Positions 14,399 through 62,347 of a DNA stretch of 64,000 bases are shown piece after piece. The translations under genes were made by a program, and so were the position numbers. This stretch comes from Macrostomum lignano (Eukaryota): contig NIVC01000685.1 in NCBI GenBank assembly GCA_002269645.1, positions 31,190 through 95,189 on the forward strand, read 5' to 3'. Position 1 is the first letter of the stretch. Every line of letters starts with the position of its first letter. The notes under the pieces are model-generated. The model did no database searches and had not been told where the DNA came from. It was given only the letters and a program-made list of their open reading frames with translations.

Positions 14399-17300
14399 AT
14401 GAATGCTGATATATCATCTTCGATTGGAATTAAACATCAGACAACAAAGACTGAAGGTCAGGCAACAAAGGCTGACGACCAGACAACAAAAACTGAAGGT
14501 CAGACAACAAAAACTAAAGGTCAGACAACAAAAACTGAAGGTCAGACAACAAAAACTGAAGGTCGGACAACAAAGGTTGACGATCAGACAACAAAGGCTG
14601 ACGACCAGACAACAAAGGCTGACGATCAGACAACAAAAACTGAAGGTCAGACAACAAAGGCTGACGATCAGACAACAAAGGCTGACGATCAGACAACAAA
14701 GGCTGACGATCAGACAATAAAAGCTGACGATCGGACAATAAAGGCTGACGACCAGACAAAAAAAACTGAAGGTCAGACAACAAAAACTGAAGATCAGACA
14801 ACAAGAACTGAAGGTCAGACAACAGAAACTGAAGGTCGGGGAACAAAAACTGAAGGTCAGACAACAAAGGCTGACGATCAGACAACAAAGGCTGACAATC
14901 AGACAATAAAAGCTGACGATCGGACAATAAAGGCTGACGACCAGACAAAAAAAACTGAAGGTCAGACAACAAAAACTGAAGATCAGACAACAAGAACTGA
15001 AGGTCAGACAACAGAAACTGAAGGTCGGACAACAAAGGTTGACGATCAGACAACAAAGGCTGACGACCAGACAACAAAGGCTGACGATCAGACAACAAAA
15101 ACTGAAGGTCAGACAACAAAGGCTGACGATCAGACAACAAAGGCTGACGATCAGACAACAAAGGCTGACGATCAGACAATAAAAGCTGACGATCGGACAA
15201 TAAAGGCTGACGACCAGACAAAAAAAACTGAAGGTCAGACAACAAAAACTGAAGATCAGACAACAAGAACTGAAGGTCAGACAACAGAAACTGAAGGTCG
15301 GGGAACAAAAACTGAAGGTCAGACAACAAAGGCTGACGATCAGACAACAAAGGCTGACGATCAGACAATAAAAGCTGACGATCGGACAATAAAGGCTGAC
15401 GACCAGACAAAAAAAACTGAAGGTCAGACAACAAAAACTGAAGATCAGACAACAAGAACTGAAGGTCAGACAACAGAAACTGAAGGTCGGGGAACAAAAA
15501 CTGAAGGTCAGACAACAAAGGCTGACGATCAGACAACAAAGGCTGACGACCAGACAACAGAGGCTGACGATCAGACAACAAAAACTGAAGGTCAGACAAC
15601 AAAGGCTGACGATCAGACAACAAAGGCTGACGACCAGACAACAGAGGCTGACGATCAGACAACAAAAACTGAAGGTCAGACAACAAAGGCTGACGATCAG
15701 ACAACAAAGGCTGACGATCAGACAACAAAGGCTGACGATCAGACAACAAAGGCTGACGATCAGACAACAAAAACTGAAGGTCAGACAACAAAGGCTGACG
15801 ATCAGACAACAAAGGCTGACGACAAGACAACAAAGGCTGACGATCAGACAACAAAGGCTGAAGGTCAGACAACAAAGGCTGACGATCAGACAACAAAGGC
15901 TGACGATCAGACAACAAAGGCTGACGATCAGACAATAAAAGCTGACGATCGGACAATAAAGGCTGATGACCAGACAACAAAAACTGAAGGTCAGACAACA
16001 AAAACTGAAGATCAGACAACAAAAACTGAAGGTCAGACAACAAAAACTGAAGGTCGGACAACAAAAACTGAAGGTCAGACAACAAAGGCTGACGACCAGA
16101 CAACAAAAACTGAAGGTCAGACAACAAAGGCTGACGATCAGACAACAAAAACTGAAGGTCAGACGACAAAGGCTGACGATCAGACAACAAAGGCTGACGA
16201 CCAGACAACAAAGGCTGAAGGTCAGACAACAAAAACTGAAGGTCAGACAACAAAAACTGAAGGTCAGACAACAAAAACTGAAGGTCAGACAACAAAAACT
16301 GAAGGTCAGACAACAAAAACTGAAGGTCAGACAACAAAGGCTGACGACCAGACAACAAAAACTGAAGGTCAGACAACAAAGGCTGACGATCAGACAACAA
16401 AAACTGAAGGTCAGACAACAAAGGCTGACGATCAGACAACAAAGGCTGACGACCAGACAACAAAGGCTGACGATCAGACAACAAAAACTGAAGGTCAGAC
16501 AACAGAGGCTGACGATCAGACAACAAAAACTGAAGGTCAGACAACAAAAACTGAAGGTCAGACAACAAAGGCTGACGATCAGACAACAAAGGCTGACGAT
16601 CAGACAACAAAAACTGAAGGTCAGACAACAGAGGCTGACGATCAGACAACAAAAACTGAAGTTCAGACAACAAAAACTGAAGGTCGGACAACAAAAACTG
16701 AAGGTCAGACAACAAAGGCTGAAGGTCAGACAACAAAAACTGAAGGTCAGACAACAAAAACTGAAGGTCAGACAACAAAAACTGAAGGTCAGACAACAAA
16801 AACTGAAGGTCAGACAACAAAAACTGACGATCAGGCAACAAAGGCTGACGATCAGACAACAAAGGCTGACGATCAGACAACAAAAACTGAAGGTCAGACA
16901 ACAGAGGCTGACGATCAGACAACAAAAACTGAAGTTCAGACAACAAAAACTGAAGGTCAGACAACAAAAACTGAAGGTCAGACAACAAAAACTGAAGGTC
17001 AGACAACAAAGGCTGACGATCAGGCAACAAAGGCTGACGATCAGACAACAAAGGCTGACGATCAGACAACAAAAACTGAAGGTCAGACAACAGAGGCTGA
17101 CGATCAGACAACAAAAACTGAAGTTCAGACAACAAAAACTGAAGGTCAGACAACAAAGGTTGACGATCAGACAACAAAGGCTGACGACAAGACAACAAAG
17201 GCTGACGATCAGACAACAAAAACTGAAGGTCAGACAACAAAGGCTGACGATCAGACAACAAAAACTGAAGGTCAGACAACAAAGGCTGACGATCAGACAA

Positions 17301-20300
17301 CAAAGGCTGACGATCAGACGACAAAGGCTGACGACCAGACAACAAAGGCTGACGACCAGACAACAAAGGCTGACGATCAGACAACAAAAACTGAAGGTCA
17401 GACAACAAAAACTGAAGGTCAGGCAACAAAAACTGAAGGTCAGACAACAAAGGCTGACGATCAGACAACAAAGGCTGACGACCAGACAACAAAGGCTGAC
17501 GATCAGACAACAAAAACTGAAGGTCAGACAACAGAGGCTGACGATCAGACAACAAAAACTGAAGGTCAGACAACAAAGGCTGACGATCAGACAACAAAGG
17601 CTGACGATCAGACAACAAAGGCTGACGGTCAGACAACAAAAACTGAAGGTCAGACAACAAAAACTGAAGGTCAGACAACAAAGGTTGACGATCAGACGAC
17701 AAAGGCTGACGACCAGACAACAAAGGCTGACGATCAGACAACAAAGGCTGACGATCAGACAACAAAGGCTGACGATCAGACAACAAAGGCTGACGATCAG
17801 ACAACAAAGGCTGACGATCAGACAAAAAAAACTGAAGGTCAGACAACAAAAACTGAAGATCAGACAACAAGAACTGAAGGTCAGACAACAGAAACTGAAG
17901 GTCGGACAACAAAGGTTGACGATCAGACAACAAAGGCTGACGACCAGACAACAAAGGCTGACGATCAGACAACAAAAACTGAAGGTCAGACAACAAAGGC
18001 TGACGATCAGACAACAAAGGCTGACGATCAGACAACAAAGGCTGACGATCAGACAATAAAAGCTGACGATCGACAATAAAGGCTGACGACCAGACAAAAA
18101 AAACTGAAGGTCAGACAACAAAAACTGAAGGTCAGACAACAAAGGTTGACGATCAGACGACAAAGGCTGACGATCAGACAACAAAGGCTGACGACCAGAC
18201 AACAAAGGCTGAAGGTCAGACAACAAAAACTGAAGGTCAGACAACAAAAACTGAAGGTCAGACAACAAAAACTGAAGGTCAGACAACAAAAACTGAAGGT
18301 CAGACAACAAAGGCTGACGACCAGACAACAAAAACTGAAGGTCAGACAACAAAGGCTGACGATCAGACAACAAAAACTGAAGGTCAGACAACAAAGGCTG
18401 ACGATCAGACAACAAAGGCTGACGACCAGACAACAAAGGCTGACGATCAGACAACAAAAACTGAAGGTCAGACAACAGAGGCTGACGATCAGACAACAAA
18501 AACTGAAGGTCGACAACAAAAACTGAAGGTCAGACAACAAAGGCTGAAGGTCAGACAACAAAAACTGAAGGTCAGACAACAAAAACTGAAGGTCAGACAA
18601 CAAAAACTGAAGGTCAGACAACAAAGGCTGACGATCAGACAACAAAGGCTGACGATCAGACAACAAAGGCTGACGATCAGACAACAAAGGCTGACGATCA
18701 GACAACAAAGGCTGACGATCAGACAACAAAAACTGAAGGTCAGACAACAAAAACTGAAGGTCAGACAACAAAGGCTGACGATCAGGCAACAAAGGCTGAC
18801 GATCAGACAACAAAGGCTGACGATCAGACAACAAAAACTGAAGGTCAGACAACAGAGGCTGACGATAAGACAACAAAAACTGAAGTTCAGACAACAAAAA
18901 CTGAAGGTCAGACAACAAAGGTTGACGATCAGACAACAAAGGCTGACGATCAGACAAAAAAAACTGAAGGTCAGACAACAAAAACTGAAGATCAGACAAC
19001 AAGAACTGAAGGTCAGACAACAGAAACTGAAGGTCGGACAACAAAGGTTGACGATCAGACAACAAAGGCTGACGACCAGACAACAAAGGCTGACGATCAG
19101 ACAACAAAAACTGAAGGTCAGACAACAAAGGCTGACGATCAGACAACAAAGGCTGACGATCAGACAACAAAGGCTGACGATCAGACAATAAAAGCTGACG
19201 ATCGGACAATAAAGGCTGACGACCAGACAAAAAAAACTGAAGGTCAGACAACAAAAACTGAAGGTCAGACAACAAAGGTTGACGATCAGACGACAAAGGC
19301 TGACGATCAGACAACAAAGGCTGACGACCAGACAACAAAGGCTGAAGGTCAGACAACAAAAACTGAAGGTCAGACAACAAAAACTGAAGGTCAGACAACA
19401 AAAACTGAAGGTCAGACAACAAAAACTGAAGGTCAGACAACAAAAACTGAAGGTCAGACAACAAAGGCTGACGACCAGACAACAAAAACTGAAGGTCAGA
19501 CAACAAAGGCTGACGATCAGACAACAAAAACTGAAGGTCAGACAACAAAGGCTGACGATCAGACAACAAAGGCTGACGACCAGACAACAAAGGCTGACGA
19601 TCAGACAACAAAAACTGAAGGTCAGACAACAGAGGCTGACGATCAGACAACAAAAACTGAAGGTCGGACAACAAAAACTGAAGGTCAGACAACAAAGGCT
19701 GAAGGTCAGACAACAAAAACTGAAGGTCAGACAACAAAAACTGAAGGTCAGACAACAAAAACTGAAGGTCAGACAACAAAAACTGAAGGTCAGACAACAA
19801 AAACTGAAGGTCAGACAACAAAGGCTGACGATCAGACAACAAAGGCTGACGATCAGACAACAAAGGCTGACGATCAGACAACAAAGGCTGACGATCAGAC
19901 AACAAAAACTGAAGATCAGACAACAAAAACTGAAGGTCAGACAACAAAGGCTGACGATCAGGCAACAAAGGCTGACGATCAGACAACAAAGGCTGACGAT
20001 CAGACAACAAAAACTGAAGGTCAGACAACAGAGGCTGACGATCAGACAACAAAAACTGAAGTTCAGACAACAAAAACTGAAGGTCAGACAACAAAGGTTG
20101 ACGATCAGACAACAAAGGCTGACGACAAGACAACAAAGGCTGACGATCAGACAACAAAAACTGAAGGTCAGACAACAAAGGCTGACGATCAGACAACAAA
20201 AACTGAAGGTCAGACAACAAAGGCTGACGATCAGACAACAAAGGCTGACGATCAGACGACAAAGGCTGACGACCAGACAACAAAGGCTGACGACCAGACA

Positions 20301-23300
20301 ACAAAGGCTGACGATCAGACAACAAAAACTGAAGGTCAGACAACAAAAACTGAAGGTCAGGCAACAAAAACTGAAGGTCAGACAACAAAGGCTGACGATC
20401 AGACAACAAAGGCTGACGACCAGACAACAAAGGCTGACGATCAGACAACAAAAACTGAAGGTCAGACAACAGAGGCTGACGATCAGACAACAAAAACTGA
20501 AGGTCAGACAACAAAGGCTGACGATCAGACAACAAAGGCTGACGATCAGACAACAAAAACTGAAGGTCAGACAACAGAGGCTGACGATCAGACAACAAAA
20601 ACTGAAGGTCGGACAACAAAAACTGAAGGTCAGACAACAAAGGCTGAAGGTCAGACAACAAAAACTGAAGGTCAGACAACAAAAACTGAAGGTCAGACAA
20701 CAAAAACTGAAGGTCAGACAACAAAAACTGAAGGTCAGACAACAAAAACTGAAGGTCAGACAACAAAGGCTGACGATCAGACAACAAAGGCTGACGATCA
20801 GACAACAAAGGCTGACGATCAGACAACAAAGGCTGACGATCAGACAACAAAAACTGAAGATCAGACAACAAAAACTGAAGGTCAGACAACAAAGGCTGAC
20901 GATCAGGCAACAAAGGCTGACGATCAGACAACAAAGGCTGACGATCAGACAACAAAAACTGAAGGTCAGACAACAGAGGCTGACGATCAGACAACAAAAA
21001 CTGAAGTTCAGACAACAAAAACTGAAGGTCAGACGACAAAGGCTGACGACCAGACAACAAAGGCTGACGACCAGACAACAAAGGCTGACGATCAGACAAC
21101 AAAAACTGAAGGTCAGACAACAAAAACTGAAGGTCAGGCAACAAAAACTGAAGGTCAGACAACAAAGGCTGACGATCAGACAACAAAGGCTGACGACCAG
21201 ACAACAAAGGCTGACGATCAGACAACAAAAACTGAAGGTCAGACAACAGAGGCTGACGATCAGACAACAAAAACTGAAGGTCAGACAACAAAGGCTGACG
21301 ATCAGACAACAAAGGCTGACGGTCAGACAACAAAAACTGAAGGTCAGACAACAAAAACTGAAGGTCAGACAACAAAGGTTGACGATCAGACAACAAAGGC
21401 TGACGACCAGACAACAAAGGCTGACGATCAGACAACAAAAACTGAAGGTCAGACAACAAAGGCTGACGATCAGACAACAAAGGCTGACGATCAGACAACA
21501 AAGGCTGACGATCAGACAAAAAAGCTGACGATCAGACAATAAAGGCTGACGACCAGACAACAAAAACTGAAGGTCAGACAACAGAGGCTGACGATCAGAC
21601 AACAAAAACTGAAGTTCAGACAACAAAAACTGAAGGTCAGACTACAAAGGTTGACGATCAGACAACAAAGGCTGACGACAAGACAACAAAGGCTGACGAT
21701 CAGACAACAAAAACTGAAGGTCAGACAACAAAGGCTGACGATCAGACAACAAAAACTGAAGGTCAGACAACAAAGGCTGACGATCAGACAACAAAGGCTG
21801 ACGATCAGACGACAAAGGCTGACGACCAGACAACAAAGGCTGACGACCAGACAACAAAGGCTGACGATCAGACAACAAAAACTGAAGGTCAGACAACAAA
21901 AACTGAAGGTCAGGCAACAAAAACTGAAGGTCAGACAACAAAGGCTGACGATCAGACAACAAAGGCTGACGACCAGACAACAAAGGCTGACGATCAGACA
22001 ACAAAAACTGAAGGTCAGACAACAGAGGCTGACGATCAGACAACAAAAACTGAAGGTCAGACAACAAAGGCTGACGATCAGACAACAAAGGCTGACGATC
22101 AGACAACAAAGGCTGACGATCAGACAACAAAGGCTGACGGTCAGACAACAAAAACTGAAGGTCAGACAACAAAAACTGAAGGTCAGACAACAAAGGCTGA
22201 CGACCAGACAACAAAAACTGAAGGTCAGACAACAAAGGCTGACGATCAGACAACAAAAACTGAAGGTCAGACAACAAAGGCTGACGATCAGACAACAAAG
22301 GCTGACGACCAGACAACAAAGGCTGACGATCAGACAACAAAAACTGAAGGTCAGACAACAGAGGCTGACGATCAGACAACAAAAACTGAAGGTCGGACAA
22401 CAAAAACTGAAGGTCAGACAACAAAGGCTGAAGGTCAGACAACAAAAACTGAAGGTCAGACAACAAAAACTGAAGGTCAGACAACAAAAACTGAAGGTCA
22501 GACAACAAAAACTGAAGGTCAGACAACAAAAACTGAAGGTCAGACAACAAAGGCTGACGATCAGACAACAAAGGCTGACGATCAGACAACAAAGGCTGAC
22601 GATCAGACAACAAAGGCTGACGATCAGACAACAAAAACTGAAGGTCAGACAACAAAAACTGAAGGTCAGACAACAAAGGCTGACGATCAGGCAACAAAGG
22701 CTGACGATCAGACAACAAAGGCTGACGATCAGACAACAAAAACTGAAGATCAGACAACAAGAACTGAAGGTCAGACAACAGAAACTGAAGGTCGGACAAC
22801 AAAGGTTGACGATCAGACAACAAAGGCTGACGACCAGACAACAAAGGCTGACGATCAGACAACAAAAACTGAAGGTCAGACAACAAAGGCTGACGATCAG
22901 ACAACAAAGGCTGACGATCAGACAACAAAGGCTGACGATCAGACAATAAAAGCTGACGATCGGACAATAAAGGCTGACGACCAGACAAAAAAACTGAAGG
23001 TCAGACAACAAAAACTGAAGGTCAGACAACAAAGGTTGACGATCAGACGACAAAGGCTGACGATCAGACAACAAAGGCTGACGACCAGACAACAAAGGCT
23101 GAAGGTCAGACAACAAAAACTGAAGGTCAGACAACAAAAACTGAAGGTCAGACAACAAAAACTGAAGGTCAGACAACAAAAACTGAAGGTCAGACAACAA
23201 AGGCTGACGACCAGACAACAAAAACTGAAGGTCAGACAACAAAGGCTGACGATCAGACAACAAAAACTGAAGGTCAGACAACAAAGGCTGACGATCAGAC

Positions 23301-26300
23301 AACAAAGGCTGACGACCAGACAACAAAGGCTGACGATCAGACAACAAAAACTGAAGGTCAGACAACAAGGCTGACGATCAGACAACAAAAACTGAAGGTC
23401 AGACAACAAAAACTGAAGGTCAGACAACAAAGGCTGAAGGTCAGACAACAAAAACTGAAGGTCAGACAACAAAAACTGAAGGTCAGACAACAAAAACTGA
23501 AGGTCAGACAACAAAGGCTGACGATCAGACAACAAAGGCTGACGATCAGACAACAAAGGCTGACGATCAGACAACAAAGGCTGACGATCAGACAACAAAG
23601 GCTGACGATCAGACAACAAAAACTGAAGTTCAGACAACAAAAACTGAAGGTCAGACAACAAAGGTTGACGATCAGACAACAAAGGCTGACGACAGACAAC
23701 AAAGGCTGACGATCAGACAACAAAAACTGAAGGTCAGACAACAAAGGCTGACGATCAGACAACAAAAACTGAAGGTCAGACAACAAAGGCTGACGATCAG
23801 ACAACAAAGGCTGACGATCAGACAACAAAGGCTGACGACAGACAACAAAGGCTGACGACCAGACAACAAAGGCTGACGATCAGACAACAAAAACTGAAGG
23901 TCAGACAACAAAAACTGAAGGTCAACAAAAACTGAAGGTCAGACAACAAAGGCTGACGATCAGACAACAAAGGCTGACGACCAGACAACAAAGGCTGACG
24001 ATCAGACAACAAAAACTGAAGGTCAGACAACAAGGCTGACGATCAGACAACAAAAACTGAAGGTCAGACAACAAAGGCTGACGATCAGACAACAAAGGCT
24101 GACGTCAGACAACAAAAACTGAAGGTCAGACAACAAAAACTGAAGGTCAGACAACAAAGGTTGACGATCAGACAACAAAGGCTGACGACCAGACAACAAA
24201 GGCTGACGATCAGACAACAAAAACTGAAGGTCAGACAACAAAGGCTGACGATCAGACAACAAAGGCTGACGATCAGACAACAAAGGCTGACGATCAGACA
24301 AAAAAGCTGACGATCAGACAACAAAAAGGCTGACGACCAGACAACAAAAACTGAAGGTCAGACAACAAGGCTGACGATCAGACAACAAAAACTGAAGTCA
24401 GACAACAAAAACTGAAGGTCAGACAACAAAGGCTGACGATCAGACAACAAAGGCTGACGACAGACAACAAAGGCTGACGATCAGACAACAAAAACTGAAG
24501 GTCAGACAACAAAGGCTGACGATCAGACAACAAAAACTGAAGGTCAGACAACAAAGGCTGACGATCAGACAACAAAGGCTGACGATCAGACAACAAAGGC
24601 TGACGATCAGACAACAAAGGCTGACGATCAGACAACAAAGGCTGACGATCAGACAACAAAAACTGAAGGTCAGACAACAAAAACTGAAGGTCAGACAACA
24701 AAAACTGAAGGTCAGACAACAAAGGCTGACGATCAGACAACAAAGGCTGACGACCAGACAACAAAGGCTGACGATCAGACAACAAAAACTGAAGGTCAGA
24801 CAACAAGGCTGACGATCAGACAACAAAAACTGAAGGTCAGACAACAAAGGCTGACGATCAGACAACAAAGGCTGACGATCAGACAACAAAGGCTGACGAT
24901 CAGACAACAAAGGCTGACGTCAGACAACAAAAACTGAAGGTCAGACAACAAAAACTGAAGGTCAGACAACAAAGGCTGACGATCAGACAACAAAAACTGA
25001 AGGTCAGACAACAAAGGCTGACGATCAGACAACAAAAACTGAAGGTCAGACAACAAAGGCTGACGATCAGACAACAAAGGCTGACGACAGACAACAAAGG
25101 CTGACGATCAGACAACAAAAACTGAAGGTCAGACAACAAGGCTGACGATCAGACAACAAAAACTGAAGGTCAGACAACAAAAACTGAAGGTCAGACAACA
25201 AAGGCTGAGGTCAGACAACAAAAACTGAAGTCAGACAACAAAAACTGAAGGTCAGACAACAAAAACTGAAGGTCAGACAACAAAAACTGAAGGTCAGACA
25301 ACAAAAACTGAAGGTCAGACAACAAAGGCTGACGATCAGACAACAAAGGCTGACGATCAGACAACAAAGGCTGACGATCAGACAACAAAGGCTGACGATC
25401 AGACAACAAAAACTGAAGGTCAGACAACAAAAACTGAAGGTCAGACAACAAAGGCTGACGATCAGACAACAAAGGCTGACGATCAGACAACAAAGGCTGA
25501 CGATCAGACAACAAAAACTGAAGGTCAGACAACAAAACTGAAGGTCAGACAACAAAACTGAAGGTCAGACAACAAAGGTGACGATCAGACAACAAAGGCT
25601 GACGACCAGACAACAAAGGCTGACGATCAGACAACAAAAACTGAAGGTCAGACAACAAAGGCTGACGATCAGACAACAAAGGCTGACGATCAGACAACAA
25701 AGGCTGACGATCAGACAAAAAAGCTGACGATCAGACAAAAAGGCTGACGACCAGACAAAAAAACTGAAGGTCAGACAACAAAAACTGAAGGTCAGACAAC
25801 AAAGGTTGACGATCAGACAACAAAGGCTGACGATCAGACAACAAAGGCTGACGACCAGACAACAAAGGCTGAAGGTCAGACAACAAAAACTGAAGGTCAG
25901 ACAACAAAAACTGAAGGTCAGACAACAAAAACTGAAGGTCAGACAACAAAAACTGAAGGTCAGACAACAAAGGCTGACGACCAGACAACAAAAACTGAAG
26001 GTCAGACAACAAAGGCTGACGATCAGACAACAAAAACTGAAGGTCAGACAACAAAGGCTGACGATCAGACAACAAAGGCTGACGACCAGACAACAAAGGC
26101 TGACGATCAGACAACAAAAACTGAAGGTCAGACAACAAGGCTGACGATCAGACAACAAAAACTGAAGGTCGACAACAAAAACTGAAGGTCAGACAACAAA
26201 GGCTGAAGGTCAGACAACAAAAACTGAAGGTCAGACAACAAAAACTGAAGGTCAGACAACAAAAACTGAAGGTCAGACAACAAAGGCTGACGATCAGACA

Positions 26301-47787: not shown

Positions 47788-48458
47788 AAAAAATGCCATC
47801 ATTTATTGATCGAGTTCAGATGCTGTGTCGATTGTGTCGATTGGACGTATGGTTCGCCAACTGGTTGCTGCAAACATTGAAACCGTATTTATTTACAATA
47901 TTCACATTATTCACCATACTACTGTTAGTAGTAGATTTACTAAAGGACGTAATGAAAGCAGTAGTAATAGCAACAGTAGAAGCAGCAAGATTTTCCTCCA
48001 TTAGTTTAGTAATAGAAGTAGTAGTATTGGGAGGACTGATATGGGCCGCTTTTCAACATTTACGCGGAAGAACGCCTTCATTAGAAGGGCAAGGCGGCGA
48101 ACGTTCAAACATAAATCTTATCTCGCGCGATTCTAGCCATGAAGACATCAGCAGGACACCTGAAGGCCCGGTGCGTAATTTTAATCCTTTAAATTGGAAC
48201 TTCTCTGCTCTTCTCTTCTCTGCAATTGTTAGTACAGTTTGGATAGGTCAGATGAGTCAGCAAACAGTGAGGGAAGATCCGAAAGCCACTGAACCGAGTC
48301 AATGTGGTAAACATCAATCATCAAGTTCATGGTCGAGTAATATTTTAACTGGTTGGACATGGTTCAAAGATGCAGCCGTGGCTAAACTTACTGCTGAGTC
48401 GGTTAAGAAGACAGTATCTTCAGTCCTTAGTACGGTTACTGAACACCGTCCTGACGAT

Positions 48459-48710
48459 CAGACAACAAAGGCTGACGATCAGACAACAAAGGCTGACGAT
48501 CAGACAACAAAGGCTGACGATCAGACAACAAAGGCTGACGATCAGACAACAAAGGCTGACGATCAGACAACAAAGGCTGACGATTGGACAATAAAGGCTG
48601 ACGATCAGACAACAAAGGCTGACGATCAGACAATAAAAACTGAAGGTCAGACAATAAAGGCTGACGATCAGACAGCGAGGATTGAAGGTCAGACAACAAA
48701 GGATGGAGGT
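48459..48710 (+). repeat. 12 in-frame units of the same 21-bp QTTKADD repeat inside A2
   Basis: Same unit sequence as 14438-41444. Confidence 0.95.
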
Positions 48711-48965
48711 CAGATGAGTCAGCAAACAGTGACTGAAGATCCCAAAACAAATGCTGGAGGTCAGATGAGTCAGCAAACAGTGACTGAAGATCCGAAAACA
48801 AATGCTGGAGGTCAGATGAGTCAGCAAACAGTGACTGAAGATCCGAAAACAAATGCTGGAGGTCAGATGAGTCAGCAAACAGTGACTGAAGATCCGAAAA
48901 CAAATGCTGGAGGTCAGATGAGTCAGCAAACAGTGACTGAAGATCCGAAAACAAATGCTGGAGGT
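48711..48965 (+). repeat. 51-bp coding repeat (QMSQQTVTEDPKTNAGG), 5 copies
   Basis: Copies start at 48711, 48762, 48813, 48864 and 48915; a diverged sixth starts at 48966. Confidence 0.95.
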
Positions 48966-51780: not shown

Positions 51781-52098
51781 TAGCTAGCAACGCCCATCAT
51801 AAACCCAAAATATCATAACTCCGAAGATGACAACAATGTCTACTCTATTTCGGTTTCCCGAGTTATACTGAAGTATTTCAGGTTTGTGATGGCGACCCGT
51901 GGAAAAGACCTGACTGCTTGCCTCCTCGCTGGCTCCGAGTCGACTGTCGCCCCCTTGATTTGCGACAGTGCTCAAAACAACTTTGAACTGAACAAAGATA
52001 TTTCATACCTAGTCTTTTGTTATAATACATTTCTTCTTTTCAGCTCTAGGACTAATCAAAATACAGAACTTTGCTCAGCCTCCAGAAGCGTTAAGCCT

Positions 52099-53187
52099 AT
52101 GCCGCCAGCCGGAAGCAGATCCAACCCGACTAATTTAAAGACCCAGGGCGAAAATGTTGCCGACTCTGGTTCCTTCTTTGCACCTATCATGGACAACAAT
52201 CTGTTATTGCTCGTATTTTTCGTAGGAATTATAGTTTTGATTTATCTTAGGCTCCAAAAAAAGACTATATTAAACACACATAAAAATACCGTTACCAATA
52301 TAATCATCGTTGAAAGATTGTACTCTACGTCAAAGAACCTCTGCCGCTGCGAGTACTCTGCGTCAAAGAACCTCTGCCTCTGCGTTCGAAAGTTTTTTAC
52401 TAGGTCTAGAAAGCAAGCAGAAAAACGTGTAAATCGAGGAAACCAGCTGAAGCTTCGTCAAAACTGGCGCGAAGCTGGGCAGGAATTCGAAGCCGCGGCC
52501 GAGCAGTTCTCAAAGCAGAGGCGATGCGAGCTCGATGCGGCCAACAATTACTCGGAGGCTGCGAACTGCTACCGCAAGCTGCCAGACACGAGACCGAAGG
52601 CCGTGCGGTGCCTGCAGCAAGCGGCCGAGATGTACGCAGAGCAGGGCCAGTTCAGCATCGCTGCCAGACAGCTGGAGGAGGCTGGAGAGCTGCTGACTGC
52701 ATCTCAGCAAGTCGAGGAGGCCATCGATGCCTACTTGAGAGCGGCGGACTTCTGGAGCGGCGAGGACAGTCCGGCCAACGCTGCGGGCAGCCGCGCCAAG
52801 GCCGCGGAGTTGATGGCGGACTGCGGGAGGCTGACAGATGCAGCCGCGGTGTTTGAGGATCTGGGAGTGTCGGCTGAGCAGCACAGTCTGTTGAGCTTCG
52901 GAGCCAAGGACCAGCTGGCCAAGAGCTGTCTGTGCCTGCTGTGCTCAGGAGCTGCGGGAGTCGGCGAGAAGGCGGAGCAGCTGGCTGGGCTGTGCGGCTC
53001 GTTCAAGGACACCGACGAGCTCTCGCTGGTGAGGTCGCTGGCTTCGGCTACCGACGCTCGCGACGTCGCAGCCGTCGACGCCGCGCTGTCCGAGTTCGAG
53101 AGGTTCAACAACTTGGACGACTTCGCCAGGAGGAGGCTGCACCAGCTGAGGCAGTTTGTGGCTTCTGGCGGGGTGCAGCTGCAGTAG
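52099..53187 (+). CDS. Alpha-SNAP-like protein B2 (362 aa from ATG 52099; frame open from 51886) with an N-terminal TM helix
   Basis: Intact ORF. The ATG is homologous to the B1 start. TM LLLLVFFVGIIVLIYL is followed by RLQKK and a SNAP domain ending VQLQ*. Confidence 0.9.
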   Translation: MPPAGSRSNPTNLKTQGENVADSGSFFAPIMDNNLLLLVFFVGIIVLIYLRLQKKTILNTHKNTVTNIIIVERLYSTSKNLCRCEYSASKNLCLCVRKFFTRSRKQAEKRVNRGNQLKLRQNWREAGQEFEAAAEQFSKQRRCELDAANNYSEAANCYRKLPDTRPKAVRCLQQAAEMYAEQGQFSIAARQLEEAGELLTASQQVEEAIDAYLRAADFWSGEDSPANAAGSRAKAAELMADCGRLTDAAAVFEDLGVSAEQHSLLSFGAKDQLAKSCLCLLCSGAAGVGEKAEQLAGLCGSFKDTDELSLVRSLASATDARDVAAVDAALSEFERFNNLDDFARRRLHQLRQFVASGGVQLQ

Positions 53188-54910: not shown

Positions 54911-55953
54911 ATGAGTAAATCAAAAGCTGCTGATCCAGCAGTCGGGATTGAAGATCAAACAACAGGTCAGCTGGGTCAGCAACCAGTGACTGAAGTTCCC
55001 AAAGCCACTGACCAAAGTACAAGTGGTAAACATCAATCATCAAGTTCATGGTCGAGTAATATTTCAATTGGTTGGAGATGGCTCAAAGATGCAGCCGTGG
55101 CTACACTTCCTGATGCGGATGCTGCTACGTTGCTGATGCAGAGAGCCAACAAATTCGAACAGAAAGAGAAGTGGAGCGAAGCCGGAGACGCATTCTCCCA
55201 AGCTGCAGACAAATTTCGTCATCAAGGTGGCAACACAATTTACGAGCAGGCGGATTGCTATCAAAATGCTGCCAACTGTTTTTGCAAGACGGACAAATCC
55301 AAAGCCGTTCACTACTTTGAGCGAGCAGCTCAACTTTACTGCGAAGTCGGCCAGTTCAGCATTGCGGCCAGACTGATGGAGACAGCCGGTGAGCTGACTG
55401 AGGAATTGGCAAGGAAAAATCTCGCTTCGAATACTCAGAGCAGTTCCGATCCTGAGCTCAGCAGCTTTGAATTCGTAAGCGATGTGAATTCAATGCAAGA
55501 AGCCATAAACCGCTACCAGAAGGCAGCAGACTACTTCAGTGCTGAGAACAGTGTCGCCAGTGCCGCAAGCTGTAGAACCAAACTGGCCATTTTGCTTGGC
55601 GATTCGGACCAATTCCGTGATGCTGCCAACGAATTCGCAAAGCTGGGTGAAAAGGCTCAAGGCCACGATCTGCTTCAGTTCGGAGTCGCTCAAGTCGTGT
55701 CTGTGCCTTGCAATGAATCCTGAAGCCTGCTCAAAACAGGCCGATGAACTGGCAGCCAAGAGCGAGTCATTCGCTAGAAGTGACGAGTTCGCTCTGGTCA
55801 AAGGTCTTGCCGCAGCCAACAGTGTCGATGCTTTCGACAAGGCGGTAGCCGAGTACCAGAGGTCCAAATTTCCCAAAAAATTGGACGAGTTCGACATGCG
55901 CAGGATAACATGCTCGTAAAAGCGTGCAGAGCTCAACGGTCGAGCTTGCTTAG
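54911..55953 (+). pseudogene. Alpha-SNAP-like gene A3, no TM segment, two frameshifts
   Basis: The SNAP domain is closely similar to A1/A2. There is a net 11-nt loss at ~55687 (ggagtcgctcaag versus ggagccaatgatcacatgctcaag), a 9-nt in-frame insertion at ~55860 and a 2-nt deletion at ~55910. The restored frame ends STVELA* (TAG 55951-55953). Confidence 0.85.
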
Positions 55954-56734: not shown

Positions 56735-57835
56735 ATGCCACTATTTATTAAGAACCTGCTTGAAGGAGTTCAGTGGCTTGGCAATTGGGTCAAACCGTCA
56801 GTTAACTGGTCTCTGCAGACTTTAAAAACCTTGTTAGTACTGGTATGGACCTTTTCTCAGCCAATAATACAATCACTCATTAAGAAAATGCTTGAGCTAC
56901 TTCAGGTGCTGTGCTATTTGGTTAAGGCGTCGGTTTACTGGTTGCTGCACACTTCAAAATCCTGTTTATTTAAAATAGTAGCATTGGTATGGTCCACACT
57001 TCAACCAACATACAACCAACATTATGGTCCACACTTCACTCTATTCGATCAGAGCAACAGAACAGCTTCATCGCCTGTGCAAGAGGGAAATCGTTTAAAG
57101 CTTCAACAAAACTGGAGCAAAGCTGGGCGGGCATTCGAAGCCGCGGCCGAGCAGTTCTCAAAGCAGAGGCGACGCGAGCTCGATGCGGCCAACAATTACT
57201 CGGAGGCTGCGAACTGCTACCGCAAGCTGCCAGACACGAGACCGAAGGCCGTGCGGTGCCTGCAGCAAGCGGCCGAGATGTACGCAGAGCAGGGCCAGTT
57301 CAGCATCGCTGCCAGACAGCTGGAGGAGGCTGGAGACCTGCTGGCTGCATCTCAAGATCAAAGAACCTCTATCGATGCCTACTTGAGAGCGGCAGACTTC
57401 TGGAGCGGCGAGGACAGTCCGGCCAACGCTGCGGGCAGCCGCGCCAAGGCCGCAGAGTTGATGGCGGACTGCGGGAGGCTGGCAGATGCAGCCGCAGTGT
57501 TTGAGGATCTGGGAGTGTCGGCTGAGCAGCACAGTCTGTTGAGCTTCGGAGCCAAGGACCAGCTGGCCAAGAGCTGTCTGTGCCTGCTGTGCTCAGGAGC
57601 TGCGGGAGTCGGCGAGAAGGCGGAGCAGCTGGCTGGGCTGTGCGGCTCGTTCAAGGACACCGACGAGCTCTCGCTGGTGAGGTCGCTGGCTTCGGCTACC
57701 GACGCTCGCGACGTCGCAGCCGTCGACGCCGCGGTGTCCGAGTTCGAGAGGTTCAACAACTTGGACGACTTCGCCAGGAGGAGGCTGCACCAGCTGAGGC
57801 AGTTTGTGGCTTCTGGCGGGGTGCAGCTGCAGTAG
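56735..57835 (+). CDS. Alpha-SNAP-like protein B3 (366 aa) with a Trp/Leu-rich hydrophobic or amphipathic N-terminus
   Basis: Intact ORF from ATG 56735. The N-terminus has an internal duplication (VKPSVNWSLQT..LVW / VKASVYWLLHT..LVW), followed by the B-type SNAP cassette. Confidence 0.88.
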   Translation: MPLFIKNLLEGVQWLGNWVKPSVNWSLQTLKTLLVLVWTFSQPIIQSLIKKMLELLQVLCYLVKASVYWLLHTSKSCLFKIVALVWSTLQPTYNQHYGPHFTLFDQSNRTASSPVQEGNRLKLQQNWSKAGRAFEAAAEQFSKQRRRELDAANNYSEAANCYRKLPDTRPKAVRCLQQAAEMYAEQGQFSIAARQLEEAGDLLAASQDQRTSIDAYLRAADFWSGEDSPANAAGSRAKAAELMADCGRLADAAAVFEDLGVSAEQHSLLSFGAKDQLAKSCLCLLCSGAAGVGEKAEQLAGLCGSFKDTDELSLVRSLASATDARDVAAVDAAVSEFERFNNLDDFARRRLHQLRQFVASGGVQLQ

Positions 57836-58955: not shown

Positions 58956-59978
58956 ATGAAAATTGGACGTCTACAGAACTCCAGCGCAAGTTGTGTTCAC
59001 ATATACATACAGCTCTACTACCGTTATACTTCATCAGGCAGTTCTAATCTAACAAAGAGCTGCAACTATACTGAACTAGAACATCATCGGGCTACGACAA
59101 CTACTGATGAAATTTCGGTTGTTTGCTCATGGTGGTTAGCAGTGCTGCTATCATCATTGATGCTTTGGCTTCTATATCAAGTCAAGAAAATTGCAACAGG
59201 AGAAACAGCGGAGAACTTGGTTGCCAAAGGAATCAAACACAAAGCCGATAAAACTTGGAGCGAAGCTGGACAGGCATTCGAAGCCGCGGCCGAGCAGTTC
59301 TCAAAGCAGAGACGATGCGAGCTCGATGCGGCCAACAATTACTCGGAGGCTGCGAACTGCTACCGCAAGCTGCCAGACACGAGACCGAAGGCCGTGCGGT
59401 GCCTGCAGCAAGCGGCCAAGATGTACGCAGAGCAGGGCCAGTTCAGCATCGCTGCCAGACAGCTGGAGGAGGCTGGAGACCTGCTGGCTGCATCTCAAGA
59501 TCAAAGAAACGCCATCGATGCCTACTTGAGAGCGGCGGACTTCTGGAGCGGCGAGGACAGTCCGGCCAGCGCTGCGGGCAGCCGCGCCAAGGCCGCGGAG
59601 TTGATGGCGGACTGCGGGAGGCTGGCAGAGGCAGCCGCGGTGTTTGAGGATCTGGGAGTGTCGGCTGAGCAGCACAGTCTGTTGAGCTTCGGAGCCAAGG
59701 ACCACCTGGCCAAGAGCTGTCTGTGCCTGCTGTGCTCAGGAGCTGCGGGAGTCGGCGAGAAGGCGGAGCAGCTGGCTGGGCGGTGCGGCTCGTTCAAGGA
59801 CACCGACGAGCTCTCGCTGGTGAGGTCACTGGCTTCGGGTACCGACGCTCGCGACGTCGCAGCCGTCGACGCCGCGGTGGCCGAGTTCGAGAGGTTCAAC
59901 AACTTGGACGACTTCGCCAGGAGGAGGCTGGACCAGCTGAGGCAGTTTGTGGCTACTGGAGGGGTGCAGCTGCAGTAG
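58956..59978 (+). CDS. Alpha-SNAP-like protein B4 (340 aa) with an N-terminal TM helix
   Basis: Intact ORF. TM ISVVCSWWLAVLLSSLMLWLLY is followed by QVKK and the B cassette ending VQLQ*. Confidence 0.88.
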   Translation: MKIGRLQNSSASCVHIYIQLYYRYTSSGSSNLTKSCNYTELEHHRATTTTDEISVVCSWWLAVLLSSLMLWLLYQVKKIATGETAENLVAKGIKHKADKTWSEAGQAFEAAAEQFSKQRRCELDAANNYSEAANCYRKLPDTRPKAVRCLQQAAKMYAEQGQFSIAARQLEEAGDLLAASQDQRNAIDAYLRAADFWSGEDSPASAAGSRAKAAELMADCGRLAEAAAVFEDLGVSAEQHSLLSFGAKDHLAKSCLCLLCSGAAGVGEKAEQLAGRCGSFKDTDELSLVRSLASGTDARDVAAVDAAVAEFERFNNLDDFARRRLDQLRQFVATGGVQLQ

Positions 59979-61040: not shown

Positions 61041-61267
61041 ACCTTAACGTAACGTCTGCCTCACTTCCTACAAGCTGCCAGTGTTGATCAAAGAAACCAA
61101 GAACTATGTTCCCGTTCCATGTTTAAAGAGCTTAGGAACAGATAATATCTTTATGTTCCAACTTCATTTTAACGCTATTTTCAATATCACTATTCACCCT
61201 TTTTTCAGTGCATTTTCACCCAAAGCATACTAAAGAACATCTGTTTAATAACTCGCAAGAATCAAGA

Positions 61268-62347
61268 ATGGAGACTTCGAATAGCAGCGAAATCAAAAGT
61301 TCAAATAGTACCGCAATGGCAGCAGTGGAAAGTGCCGCTGCTGCTGATGCCAACAGTACGACCGGACCAACGACGAGTGTCCTAACGACGTCAAATCCGT
61401 CTTATTTAAACACAACTACTATCGACACGACTACATCAGCTCCAACAGCTCAGCCAACTGTGCCACCAGCGAAATTACATACAGCCTATATCTTTGTCGG
61501 GTTTCTGTGCATCTTGGTAGTATTGCTACTGCTGGTACTGTACTTTCTGTTGTTTAGAAAGCGTCAAACGCACGGATCGCAGCAGCGATTAATCGACGAT
61601 GGCAACAGGAACAAACATGATAAAAACTGGCTTGAAGCTGGCAAAAAGTTTGAGACTGTTGCAGATCGCTTCTCGAAGCATCGCGAGCTCGATGCGGCCA
61701 ACAATTACTCGGAGGCTGCGAACTGCTACCGCAAGCTGCCAGACACGAGACTGAAGGCCGTGCGGTGCCTGCAGCAAGCGGCCGAGATGTACGCAGAGCA
61801 GGGCCAGTTCAGCATCGCTGCCAGACAGCTGGAGGAGGCTGGAGACCTGCTGGCTGCATCTCAGCAAGTCGAGGAGGCCATCGATGTCTACGTGAGAGCG
61901 GCGGACTTCTGGAGCGGCCAGGACAGTCCGGCCAGCGCTGCGGGCAGCCGCGCCAAGGCCGCAGAGTTGATGGCGGACTGCGGGAGGCTGGCAGAGGCAG
62001 CCGCAGTGTTTGAGGATCTGGGAGTGTCGGCTGAGCAGCACAGTCTGTTGAGCTTCGGAGCCAAGGACCACCTGGCCAAGAGCTGTCTGTGCCTGCTGTG
62101 CTCAGGAGCTGCGGGAGTCGGCGAGAAGGCGGAGCAGCTGGCTGTGCTGTGCGGCTCGTTCAAGGACACCGACGAGCTCTCGCTGGTGAGGTCGCTGGCT
62201 TCGGCTACCGACGCTCGCGACGTCGCAGCCGTCGACGCCGCGGTGTCCGAGTTCGAGAGGTTCAACAACTTGGACGACTTCGCCAGGAGGAGGCTGGACC
62301 AGCTGAGACAGTTTTTAGCTACTGGTGACAGTGTGCAGTTACTGTAA
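61268..62347 (+). CDS. Alpha-SNAP-like protein B5 (359 aa): Ser/Thr-rich N-terminus, TM helix, RKR, SNAP domain
   Basis: Intact ORF from ATG 61268 (frame open from 61208). TM AYIFVGFLCILVVLLLLVLYFLLF is followed by RKR and the B cassette ending VQLL*. Confidence 0.9.
   Translation: METSNSSEIKSSNSTAMAAVESAAAADANSTTGPTTSVLTTSNPSYLNTTTIDTTTSAPTAQPTVPPAKLHTAYIFVGFLCILVVLLLLVLYFLLFRKRQTHGSQQRLIDDGNRNKHDKNWLEAGKKFETVADRFSKHRELDAANNYSEAANCYRKLPDTRLKAVRCLQQAAEMYAEQGQFSIAARQLEEAGDLLAASQQVEEAIDVYVRAADFWSGQDSPASAAGSRAKAAELMADCGRLAEAAAVFEDLGVSAEQHSLLSFGAKDHLAKSCLCLLCSGAAGVGEKAEQLAVLCGSFKDTDELSLVRSLASATDARDVAAVDAAVSEFERFNNLDDFARRRLDQLRQFLATGDSVQLL

What the first reader, a model, noticed from the sequence alone, without database searches (positions are those of the whole stretch)
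14399..62347. Tandem array of eight alpha-SNAP-like genes in which the membrane-binding N-terminus is replaced by transmembrane or hydrophobic modules
Seen: eight co-oriented intron-less copies (A1, B1, A2, B2, A3, B3, B4, B5). Homology to alpha-SNAP starts only at about human residue 40-45. B1, B2, B4, B5 and A2 have clear TM helices upstream, and B3 has a long hydrophobic stretch. Established: alpha-SNAP/Sec17 is normally a soluble, low-copy housekeeping adaptor that docks on membranes through an N-terminal apolar loop (F27/F28 in human) and recruits NSF to disassemble SNARE complexes. Inference: these are natural membrane-anchored SNAPs in which a TM helix substitutes for the loop. They could act as compartment-specific fusion regulators, SNARE traps or decoys. 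I do not know of a described family like this.
Basis: partly seen in the sequence, partly recalled or inferred. Interest (0 to 1): 0.9.

Follow-up and report, generated by a model that had tools for sequence, protein, structure and literature searches.

The report
Membrane-anchored SNAP-like gene array in a flatworm
A flatworm (Macrostomum lignano) chromosome segment carries a fast-evolving tandem family of genes in which the normally soluble SNARE-recycling adaptor alpha-SNAP has been fused to built-in membrane anchors; this looks like a natural version of an engineered protein already shown to work in yeast, but its function has not been tested.

Summary
Eight co-oriented SNAP-domain (PF14938) copies lie at 14399-62347. 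The five B copies are intact single ORFs (Pfam E 1e-46 to 1e-50). B1, B2, B4 and B5 each have one strong TM helix with N-out/C-in charge bias; B3 has an amphipathic helical hairpin.

Three corrections apply:
- All three A copies are frame-broken here, A1 and A3 by several lesions. Intact A genes exist at two near-identical M. lignano loci.
- A1 and A3 have no anchor. A1 is preceded by a 27-kb array of about 1290 21-bp (7-aa) units.
- A-type copies keep an apolar-loop-like W-F motif, so only B copies start at about residue 40.

Sister loci add copies with a Cys-rich myristoyl/palmitoyl-type N-terminus and an N-terminal signal-anchor, so membrane anchoring recurs by different means.

The SNAP part is Sec17/alpha-SNAP-like (TM-score 0.79-0.84). 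It keeps K122(R), K167, K203, L197 and the penultimate Leu. It has lost R116, K163 and the acidic NSF-binding patches.

Billion-scale protein searches found the family only in M. lignano, as "hypothetical proteins", and I found no paper describing natural TM-SNAPs.

Best reading: constitutively membrane-tethered SNAP paralogues that act on SNARE complexes with altered NSF coupling. Function and expression of these particular copies are untested.

The parts
14399..14435 (+). Putative start of A1 (ATG 14399, MNADISSSIGIK...). It has no TM or signal peptide. A splice-acceptor-like ...ttatcag lies about 30 nt upstream.
14436..41440 (+). 27-kb tandem array of a 21-bp unit, about 1290 copies. It encodes the heptads QTTKADD and QTTKTEG, in phase with ATG 14399 at its 5' end and with the A1 SNAP remnant at its 3' end. 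About 71 units are 20 nt long (1-nt deletions), and all of them lie between 18 and 36 kb. After phase correction there is 1 stop in 8315 codons (TAA at 38726).
41441..42487 (+). A1 linker plus SNAP domain remnant; probable pseudogene. It keeps the KWFSNF loop-like motif. Lesions are +1 nt near 41752, -10 nt near 42040 and an in-frame TAA at 42062.
44227..45303 (+). B1, an intact 358-aa ORF. It has a 39-aa N-terminal stub with 2 N-x-S/T sequons, a TM at residues 40-58 (nt 44344-44400), a basic linker, and a SNAP domain at residues 100-348.
45494..46152 (.). Intergenic 19-bp tandem repeat (34 copies) downstream of B1. It is part of the duplicated A-B unit and is expanded to about 2.4 kb in sister locus L002.
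47793..49972 (+). A2. In order it has a TM hairpin (residues 28-55 and 64-90, nt 47874-48062), 12 copies of the 21-bp repeat (48451-48702), 6 copies of a 51-bp repeat (48683-49000), a linker, and a SNAP domain. A single 1-nt deletion near 49393 splits it into ORFs 47793-49466 and 49403-49972.
52099..53187 (+). B2, an intact ORF and paralogue of B1 (91% nt identity). I take the start at MPPAGS by homology, although the ORF is open upstream to 51889. TM is LLLLVFFVGIIVLIYLRL. There is a 33-bp internal duplication at 52320-52384.
54911..55919 (+). A3, an A-type copy without repeats or anchor; probable pseudogene. It has an 11-nt deletion near 55686, a 9-nt insertion and a 2-nt deletion near 55909.
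56735..57835 (+). B3, an intact ORF of 366 aa from its first ATG. The N-terminus holds two amphipathic W-L-L-x-T-L-K-type helices (KD maximum 1.49), which AlphaFold2 models as a helical hairpin at residues 2-96. The SNAP domain follows.
58956..59978 (+). B4, an intact 340-aa ORF. It has a 54-aa stub with 3 sequons, a TM at residues 55-73, and a SNAP domain. Its homeologue is the single-exon GenBank gene BOX15_Mlig022924g2.
61268..62347 (+). B5, an intact ORF of 359 aa from its first ATG. It has a 76-aa Ser/Thr-rich stub with 4 sequons, a TM at residues 77-95 (KD 3.26), the motif FRKRQ, and a SNAP domain. The AlphaFold2 model has pLDDT 81, with more than 90 in the SNAP part.

Best explanation
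This is a lineage-specific (Macrostomum lignano) tandem family of alpha-SNAP-derived genes. Its products are permanently tethered to membranes instead of docking reversibly through the N-terminal apolar loop.

B-type proteins are small type-III-like membrane proteins. They have a short, sequon-rich lumenal or extracellular stub, one TM helix, a basic juxtamembrane linker and a cytosolic SNAP domain. A-type proteins have an N-terminal TM hairpin, a variable run of charged Thr-rich heptads, a W-F apolar-loop-like motif and a SNAP domain.

Inferred mechanism: the cytosolic SNAP domain binds SNARE bundles on the membrane that carries it. This gives a fixed, compartment-specific pool of SNAP activity. 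Its coupling to NSF is altered, because the penultimate Leu that stimulates the NSF ATPase is kept while the acidic NSF-N docking residues are lost.

The array evolves in three ways: duplication of an A-B unit, attachment of the roughly 700-bp SNAP cassette to unrelated 5' modules, and gene conversion among cassettes.

In this window the A copies are decaying. A1 carries a 27-kb expansion of its coding heptad repeat.

Shown: the anatomy, the fold, the residue pattern and the restricted distribution. Inferred: topology, SNARE binding, the NSF relationship and expression of these exact copies.
For: IDENTITY AND FOLD
- Pfam SNAP hits are at E 1e-46 to 1e-50, and alpha-SNAP/Sec17 are the best PDB sequence hits.
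- The AlphaFold2 model of B5 matches Sec17/alpha-SNAP chains of 20S complexes at TM-score 0.79-0.84 and rmsd about 2 A.

ANCHORS
- TM segments are strong, N-flanks are negative and C-flanks positive, and sequons occur only in the N-terminal stubs.
- Unrelated anchor types occur on the same cassette, including MGNICSCIREMCCSCWSC... and MSAIVFVILVVLIIAIVVAVYCCC in L001 and L002.

GENES ARE REAL
- More than ten intact ORFs are found across three near-identical loci. L002 is 99.6% identical to the window over 6.9 kb.
- The GenBank models of the homeologues derive from RNA-seq only.
- The SNAP domain shows long-term constraint: between A and B types dN is 0.51 with dS saturated, so omega is at most about 0.2.

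RESIDUES
- K122(R), K167, K203, L197 and Y200(F) are kept in B copies.
- The penultimate Leu is invariant in all members and in the soluble paralogue P0015.

PRECEDENT
- An engineered TM-Sec17 supports fusion and bypasses the need for apolar-loop hydrophobicity (PMC5540461).

CASSETTE EVOLUTION
- Nucleotide homology among B3, B4 and B5 starts exactly at the SNAP domain, at 94-97% identity.
- Between homeologous B1, B4 and B5 copies the N-terminal parts differ by 0.4-1.2% while the SNAP parts differ by 3-4%.
Against: - There is no direct expression, localisation or binding data for any member. Supplementary tables of three papers did not list the homeologue gene ids.
- Recent dN/dS among B copies is 0.4-1.1. 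That is weak constraint, and it is confounded by gene conversion.
- The SNARE-face residues R116 and K163 are lost. So are the NSF-docking acidic residues D217, E249 and E253 and the C-terminal DEED. Canonical 20S assembly may therefore not occur.
- All three A copies in this window are disrupted.
- TM prediction rests on hydropathy and AlphaFold2, not on a dedicated topology predictor.
- The canonical M. lignano alpha-SNAP was not retrieved for comparison.
Confidence: 0.6

Rival explanations
1. NSF-uncoupled SNARE clamps or decoys. The anchored SNAP domains bind t-SNAREs or SNARE bundles but cannot dock NSF, so they locally block fusion or SNARE recycling. This would resemble dominant-negative or excess alpha-SNAP, or the soybean Rhg1 resistance-type alpha-SNAPs.
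For: - The acidic residues corresponding to D217, E249 and E253 and the C-terminal D290-D293 patch are replaced in B copies.
- Rhg1 alpha-SNAPs with atypical C-termini are impaired in promoting NSF function and are cytotoxic in a dose-dependent way. They also sit in a tandemly repeated block (PMC6712407).
- Excess alpha-SNAP is reported to inhibit SNARE-dependent fusion (PMC6757032 abstract).
Against: - The penultimate Leu, needed to stimulate the NSF ATPase (PMC12019078), is invariant in every member, including the distant A type and P0015. That is hard to explain if NSF is irrelevant.
- No binding data exist.
Confidence: 0.2
2. Neofunctionalised SNAP-fold scaffold unrelated to SNAREs and NSF, as HAP40 is for huntingtin. 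The TPR-like solenoid would serve as a membrane-anchored protein-binding platform for some lineage-specific process, for example in secretory or reproductive cells.
For: - The family is only 30-34% identical to any canonical SNAP, whereas canonical animal SNAPs are about 50% identical to one another.
- HAP40 chains appear among the structural matches at TM-score about 0.77.
- Several SNARE-face and NSF-face residues are lost.
- Evolution is rapid, copy number varies and the family is lineage-restricted.
Against: - The best sequence and structure matches are Sec17/alpha-SNAP, not HAP40.
- K122(R), K167, K203, L197 and the penultimate Leu are retained.
- A-type copies keep a W-F motif at the apolar-loop position. 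Leishmania alpha-SNAP2 also has W-F there (PMC12019078).
Confidence: 0.12
3. Mostly non-functional DNA. On this view the array is a recently amplified, decaying cluster whose ORFs stay open through youth and gene conversion, and the TM-like N-termini are chance ORF extensions.
For: - All A copies in this window are disrupted, and A1 and A3 carry several lesions each.
- dN/dS is near 1 for several homeologous pairs.
- Copy number differs between loci.
- A 27-kb runaway repeat lies in A1.
- A retroelement remnant lies next to the array.
Against: - All five B ORFs here, and at least ten ORFs in L001 and L002, are intact over 320-560 codons.
- The B1, B4 and B5 N-terminal modules are nearly identical between homeologues (1-4 differences in about 300 nt), and each carries a proper TM with positive-inside bias.
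- RNA-seq-derived gene models exist.
- A-versus-B omega is at most about 0.2.
Confidence: 0.08

Closest known systems
Canonical alpha-SNAP / Sec17 (Pfam PF14938)
   Same: It has the same helical-solenoid fold (TM-score 0.79-0.84). Sequence homology runs over about 250 residues. K122(R), K167, K203, L197, Y200(F) and the penultimate Leu are retained.
   Different: - Canonical helix 1 is absent, and in B copies the F27/F28 apolar loop is absent too, replaced by TM, hairpin or lipid-type anchors.
- R116, K163 and the acidic NSF-docking residues are lost.
- Identity is about 30%.
- It is a multi-copy tandem array rather than a low-copy housekeeping gene.
Engineered TM-Sec17 (Song et al. 2017, eLife, PMC5540461)
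   Same: A TM anchor sits at the N-terminus of a SNAP. In the reconstituted system the anchor substitutes for the hydrophobicity of the apolar loop.
   Different: - TM-Sec17 is a laboratory fusion of the Vti1 TM to full-length Sec17, which keeps its loop and its C-terminus.
- The proteins here are natural, lack residues 1 to about 40 in B copies, and have a changed NSF-binding face.
Soybean Rhg1 resistance-type alpha-SNAPs
   Same: Both are tandemly repeated loci that encode alpha-SNAP variants with atypical C-terminal residues at the NSF-interaction site (PMC6712407).
   Different: - Rhg1 SNAPs are soluble, full length and about 90% identical to the wild type.
- The Rhg1 repeat unit is a four-gene block.
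- Their role in nematode resistance through cytotoxicity is established; no role is known here.
Protist alpha-SNAP paralogues (Giardia, Leishmania)
   Same: Both are lineage-specific duplications of SNAP. The protist paralogues have separate subcellular localisations. Leishmania alpha-SNAP2 has W-F in the membrane-interacting loop, like the A type here (PMC6172762; PMC12019078).
   Different: The protist paralogues are soluble proteins of canonical length and have no TM anchors.
M. lignano Mlig015185 (P0015), a soluble N-truncated SNAP-like paralogue
   Same: It comes from the same species and starts at the equivalent of alpha-SNAP residue 38 or so. It ends in R-L-A, with the penultimate Leu. 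It is 32-37% identical to B copies and is detected in RNA-seq.
   Different: It has no anchor, is 287 aa long and lies at another locus. It shows that N-terminal truncation and anchoring are separable steps.

Membership tests
SNAP family (Pfam PF14938; alpha/beta/gamma-SNAP, Sec17) | Significant match to the SNAP profile, above the gathering score of 25 bits | tested here: met
   B1-B5 score 160-172 bits. A2 scores 80, A3 101 and the A1 fragment 30. The intact A gene in L001 scores 163 bits.
SNAP family (Pfam PF14938; alpha/beta/gamma-SNAP, Sec17) | SNAP/Sec17 three-dimensional fold | tested here: met
   The AlphaFold2 model of B5 has pLDDT above 90 in the domain. The best Foldseek PDB hits are Sec17 and alpha-SNAP in 20S complexes, at TMt 0.79-0.84 and rmsd about 2 A.
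Functional alpha-SNAP / Sec17 | N-terminal membrane-interacting apolar loop (F27/F28 in the mammalian protein) | tested here: not met
   It is absent from all B copies, whose homology starts at about residue 40-47. A-type copies have W-F at the aligned position. No exon encoding a canonical N-terminus was found in the window.
Functional alpha-SNAP / Sec17 | Basic and hydrophobic SNARE-binding face (R116, K122, K163, K167, K203; L197, Y200) | tested here: inconclusive
   In B copies K122 is R, K167 and K203 are kept, L197 is kept and Y200 is F, while R116 is Q and K163 is G. The A type has additionally lost K203 (N). The residue roles are taken from the literature: PMC12019078, PMC5540461 and my own knowledge.
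Functional alpha-SNAP / Sec17 | Acidic NSF N-domain docking residues (D217, E249, E252, E253 and the C-terminal D290-D293) | tested here: not met
   In B copies these are A/G, S, D and A, and the tail reads ...GGVQLQ or ...REITTLT. The A type keeps D217 only. The role of these residues comes from my own knowledge of the 20S structures.
Functional alpha-SNAP / Sec17 | Penultimate C-terminal Leu (L294) that stimulates the NSF ATPase | tested here: met
   It is invariant in B1-B5, in the A type, in the extra copies in L001, and in P0001 and P0015. Its role is given in PMC12019078.
Functional alpha-SNAP / Sec17 | Binds SNARE complexes and supports NSF-driven disassembly | not testable with these tools
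   This needs biochemistry.
Functional alpha-SNAP / Sec17 | Soluble protein of about 290 aa without a transmembrane segment | tested here: not met
   B1, B2, B4 and B5 have one strong TM each and A2 has two.

The most novel reading that the evidence does not exclude
Macrostomum has evolved a toolkit of constitutively membrane-anchored SNAPs. Interchangeable N-terminal anchors (single-pass TM, hairpin, lipidated Cys-rich, signal-anchor) would address one SNAP cassette to different organelles, hard-wiring where SNARE complexes are disassembled or clamped. In the A type, a variable and potentially very long disordered heptad spacer would let the SNAP domain act at a distance from its anchor. This would be a natural counterpart of engineered TM-Sec17 and a new, compartment-encoded layer of SNARE-cycle control.
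Probability: 0.3. Interest if true: 0.8.

Novelty: new variant of a known kind. Interest (0 to 1): 0.62.

Why it matters
Alpha-SNAP/Sec17 is regarded as a soluble, low-copy universal adaptor, and its reversible membrane docking through an apolar loop is part of its mechanism. A natural family that replaces this loop with permanent anchors of several kinds would have three consequences:
- It would test in vivo what the TM-Sec17 experiments showed in vitro.
- It would offer a way to ask how the location of SNAP controls SNARE recycling versus fusion.
- It would be a clear case of modular gene birth, with one conserved cassette and many captured 5' modules, in a transgenic flatworm model where tagging and RNAi are available.

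The locus also shows how a coding heptad repeat can expand from 8-12 copies to about 1290 copies.

Tried and rejected
1. The word-indexed protein search with B1 returned only three M. lignano proteins. A profile search added only P0015, P0182 and one Logan protein. No orthologues outside M. lignano were found.
2. Exact look-ups of the window's own B1 and B4 products found nothing on record, so I obtained no transcript contigs for these exact copies.
3. I searched the literature and supplements for expression of Mlig022924 and Mlig021756 in three papers and found nothing. Only the related Mlig015185 and Mlig019747 appear, in a differential-expression table.
4. The search for the canonical M. 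lignano alpha-SNAP using the Hymenolepis protein did not list it among the best 120 hits. The parent-gene comparison was therefore not done.
5. I dropped the idea that the family began as a 5'-truncated retrocopy starting at residue 40. The A type retains the loop region, and one member has an intron.
6. I rejected the idea that the A-copy breaks are short introns. The breaks are 1-, 2-, 10- and 11-nt indels and a stop relative to intact A ORFs.
7. The test for depletion of stop codons in the 27-kb array was inconclusive. There is 1 stop in 8315 phase-corrected codons, but the variant units are amplified copies and so are not independent.
8. tRNA and Rfam scans of the window found nothing.
9. 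N-terminally extended SNAP hits in plants and vertebrates look like merged or duplicated gene models, not a TM-SNAP family.


Full report
SOURCE OF THE WINDOW

The closest proteins to the ORFs are Macrostomum lignano 'hypothetical proteins' (BOX15_Mlig022924g1/g2, Mlig021756g2), at 87-89% identity. Two contigs of the M. lignano assembly GCA_002269645.1 carry collinear versions of the locus:
- L001 (NIVC01000090.1) is about 96% identical over 7 kb.
- L002 (NIVC01000684.1) is 99.57% identical to window 57098-64000.

The window is therefore M. lignano, from another haplotype, homeologue or assembly version. Its exact products are not on record in the protein collection.

CHECK OF THE OBSERVATION

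Eight + strand SNAP-homologous copies are present.

The five B copies are uninterrupted ORFs: B1 44227-45303, B2 52099-53187, B3 56735-57835, B4 58956-59978 and B5 61268-62347.
- Their Pfam SNAP E-values are 1e-46 to 1e-50, starting at profile positions 32-42 of 282.
- The best PDB sequence hits are alpha-SNAP (E 2e-29, aligned from residue 47 or so) and Sec17.

Hydropathy results:
- B1 (maximum 2.79), B2 (2.56), B4 (2.12) and B5 (3.26) each have one strong TM segment.
- A2 has two, forming a hairpin.
- B3 reaches no more than 1.49.

AlphaFold2 models:
- B5 has a disordered residue 1-67 stub, then one long helix (70-117) that contains the TM and runs into a SNAP domain with pLDDT above 90.
- B3 has an N-terminal two-helix hairpin of moderate confidence.
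- Foldseek places the B5 model on Sec17/alpha-SNAP chains of 20S complexes, at TM-score 0.79-0.84 and rmsd about 2 A. Gamma-SNAP and HAP40 rank lower.

CORRECTIONS TO THE OBSERVATION

1. All A-type copies in this window are frame-disrupted.
   - The DNA alignment of A1, A2 and A3, compared with intact A genes elsewhere, shows the lesions below (coordinates).
   - A1 has +1 nt (near 41752), a 10-nt deletion (near 42040) and an in-frame TAA (42062).
   - A2 has a single 1-nt deletion (near 49393).
   - A3 has an 11-nt deletion (near 55686), a 9-nt insertion and a 2-nt deletion (near 55909).
   - These are not introns.
   - Intact single-ORF A genes exist in L001 (5435-7117, 560 aa) and L002 (6708-8282, 524 aa). 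The A type is therefore a real gene class. A1 and A3 look like pseudogenes, and A2 is either a very young one or carries an assembly error.

2. A1 and A3 have no hydrophobic module. The TM hairpin module of A2 occurs only once in the window.

3. The stretch 14436-41440 is one tandem array of a 21-bp unit, about 1290 copies.
   - It encodes the heptads QTTKADD and QTTKTEG.
   - It is in phase with ATG 14399 at the 5' end and with the A1 SNAP remnant at the 3' end.
   - The frame is lost 71 times, always by a 1-nt deletion and only between 18 and 36 kb. This pattern fits unpolished long-read consensus better than natural decay (inference).
   - Phase-corrected, 8315 codons contain one stop. That is not clearly fewer than expected, because variant units are amplified copies.
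   - The same repeat has 12 copies in A2, 8 in L001 and fewer than that in L002. The array is therefore a large, recent and still unverified expansion.

4. A-type homology to SNAP starts earlier, at Pfam profile position 16.
   - MAFFT aligns the A-type motif KWFSNF to the mammalian SFFSGLF loop, with W-F at the F27/F28 position.
   - Leishmania alpha-SNAP2 likewise has W-F in its membrane-interacting loop (PMC12019078).
   - Only the B type has lost the loop.

5. On 'intron-less':
   - The B coding regions are single exons. The RNA-seq-derived GenBank model of the B4 homeologue has the same start and stop.
   - P0001, at the distal end of the L001 array, has an intron of about 1.3 kb between its N-terminal exon and its SNAP exon.
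   - B1, B2, A2, B3 and B5 have a [T/C]TNCAG motif within 65 nt upstream of the ATG. This is the M. lignano SL trans-splice acceptor motif (PMC8629364).
   - The names Mlig022924 g1 and g2 mean two genes in one transcriptional unit (PMC5730564). Polycistronic transcription with trans-splicing is therefore likely (inference).

ARCHITECTURE AND EVOLUTION OF THE ARRAY

- A self-comparison shows an A-B unit duplicated once: 41665-45267 against 49123-53151, at 82-91% identity.
- B3, B4 and B5 share with B1 and B2 only the SNAP cassette. The shared stretch starts at the first residues of SNAP homology (44566 / 57098 / 59250 / 61623) and is 94-97% identical at the nucleotide level. Their 5' parts are unrelated.
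- For B1, B4 and B5 the window and L001 copies differ by 0.4-1.2% in the N-terminal part but by 3-4% in the SNAP cassette. This indicates ectopic gene conversion among cassettes, and it makes recent dN/dS values (0.36-1.15) hard to interpret.
- Over the deep A/B split, dN is 0.51 with dS saturated, so omega is at most about 0.2. The domain has therefore been under purifying selection.
- L001 and L002 extend the array beyond the window end with two or three more copies. Their N-termini are MGNICSCIREMCCSCWSC... (an N-myristoylation-type Gly2 followed by Cys clusters), MSAIVFVILVVLIIAIVVAVYCCC (an N-terminal TM) and, in P0001, MGQSHSK...
- In NIVC01000090.1 the array ends before a calpain gene.
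- Copy number differs among the three loci.

TOPOLOGY

- In B1, B2 and B5 the 15 residues before the TM are net negative or neutral and the 15 after it are net positive. In B4 the values are -3 and 0.
- N-x-S/T sequons occur in the N-terminal stubs: B1 has 2, B4 has 3 and B5 has 4.
- None of these ORFs starts with an obvious signal-peptide-like hydrophobic stretch (no predictor was run), and the stubs are short (33-76 aa).
- This fits type III (N-out, C-in) insertion, which places the SNAP domain in the cytosol (inference).

FUNCTIONAL RESIDUES

The alignment with horse NAPA and a tapeworm alpha-SNAP shows the following.
- B copies keep K122 (as R), K167, K203, L197 and Y200 (as F).
- B copies lose R116 (Q) and K163 (G).
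- The acidic residues that dock the NSF N-domain are replaced. These are D217, E249 and E253 and the C-terminal D290-D293 patch; their role is from my own knowledge of the 20S structures.
- The penultimate Leu is required to stimulate the NSF ATPase (PMC12019078). It is invariant in all members, in the A type and in the soluble 287-aa paralogue P0015 (Mlig015185).
- The family thus keeps part of the SNARE face and the catalytic-coupling Leu but not the electrostatic NSF dock.

DISTRIBUTION AND PRIOR KNOWLEDGE

- A full HMMER scan of 1.84 billion representative proteins gave two representatives above 50% identity, both from M. lignano. The next best hit dropped to 34% identity (E 7e-32), a canonical roughly 290-aa SNAP from the tapeworm Hymenolepis.
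- Among the 150 best relatives, only Rhododendron gene models have a TM before the SNAP domain. They contain duplicated partial SNAP domains and look like merged models.
- A profile search of 5.8 billion proteins found at E 1e-10 or better five M. lignano clusters and one unnamed Logan protein at 29% identity.
- The literature searches found no natural TM-anchored SNAP.
- Closest precedents:
  - engineered TM-Sec17, in which an N-terminal TM anchor bypasses the need for loop apolarity (PMC5540461);
  - soybean Rhg1 alpha-SNAPs, which have atypical C-termini, impaired NSF function, cytotoxicity and a tandemly repeated locus (PMC6712407);
  - protist SNAP paralogues with distinct localisations (PMC6172762; PMC12019078).

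EXPRESSION

Evidence is only indirect.
- The GenBank annotation of the M. lignano assembly derives entirely from a genome-guided RNA-seq transcriptome (PMC5730564), so the homeologous B3, B4 and P0001 models imply transcription.
- The related Mlig015185 is detected at baseMean of about 107 in a 2026 data set.
- I found nothing for the window's own copies.

VERDICT

The finding is real and more elaborate than described. It is a lineage-specific, modular family of SNAP-fold proteins with diverse built-in membrane anchors, of which five of the eight copies in this window are intact.

The most likely mechanism is a cytosolic SNAP domain held permanently on a given membrane, where it engages SNARE bundles with modified NSF coupling (confidence about 0.6).

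The main rivals are an NSF-uncoupled clamp or decoy (about 0.2), a repurposed scaffold (about 0.12) and largely non-functional DNA (about 0.08).

I class it as a new variant of a known kind. It would be of real interest to the membrane-fusion field if localisation and SNARE/NSF binding are confirmed.

Noticed in passing
window 14436-41440: The 27-kb heptad-coding array has all 71 of its 1-nt deletions confined to its central 18 kb, and every one shifts the phase by -1. This looks like long-read consensus error in an unpolishable repeat core. If so, the assembly's indel quality, including the A2 frameshift, is suspect.
   Followed up: partly
window 62-2542 and 2810-3733 (+): Two large ORFs (826 and 307 aa) have no Pfam family. 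Residues 343-469 of the first match human SAMD9 structures weakly (E 8e-5), so this is possibly a SAMD9-like gene upstream of the array.
   Followed up: partly
window 10849-11745 (-), with neighbouring ORFs to 12841: An RNase H domain ORF (E 1e-12) sits in a GC-rich block just upstream of A1. It is probably a retrotransposon remnant.
   Followed up: partly
window 45494-46152; L002 2142-4672: A 19-bp tandem repeat downstream of B1 has 34 copies here but spans about 2.4 kb in the near-identical locus L002. This is another rapidly varying satellite inside the array.
   Followed up: no
window 54047-54397 and 60681-61028 (inverted); L001 11723-12070: A repeat of about 350 bp is present twice in opposite orientation at 91.5% identity: once between B2 and A3, and once just upstream of B5. 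It is probably a mobile or dispersed element. It carries open frames on both strands.
   Followed up: no
window 51408-51764, 6198-6357, 8538-8772: Further short-unit tandem repeats are present: 16 bp x 22, 30 bp x 5 and 21 bp x 11. The locus is unusually rich in microsatellite- and minisatellite-like arrays.
   Followed up: no
window 48245-48396 and 48962-49106: In A2 the linker segment that precedes the SNAP domain (...GKHQSSSSWSSNILTGWTWFKDAAVA...) is duplicated on both sides of the repeat block, at 94% identity.
   Followed up: no
L001 18927-19979: This extra family copy has an N-terminal TM and an internal in-frame duplication of about 40 residues within the SNAP domain (AARQ...SPASA repeated).
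   Followed up: no
window 44847-45374 (-) and equivalents in every B copy: Long antisense and alternative-frame ORFs (120-175 aa) run across each SNAP cassette. They are most likely a by-product of the GC- and Ala-rich coding sequence rather than genes.
   Followed up: no
P0007, P0152, P0153 (Rhododendron vialii, R. molle): Annotated 'alpha-SNAP-like' proteins from these Rhododendron species have an N-terminal hydrophobic helix followed by duplicated partial SNAP domains. They may be merged tandem gene models or an independent plant oddity.
   Followed up: partly
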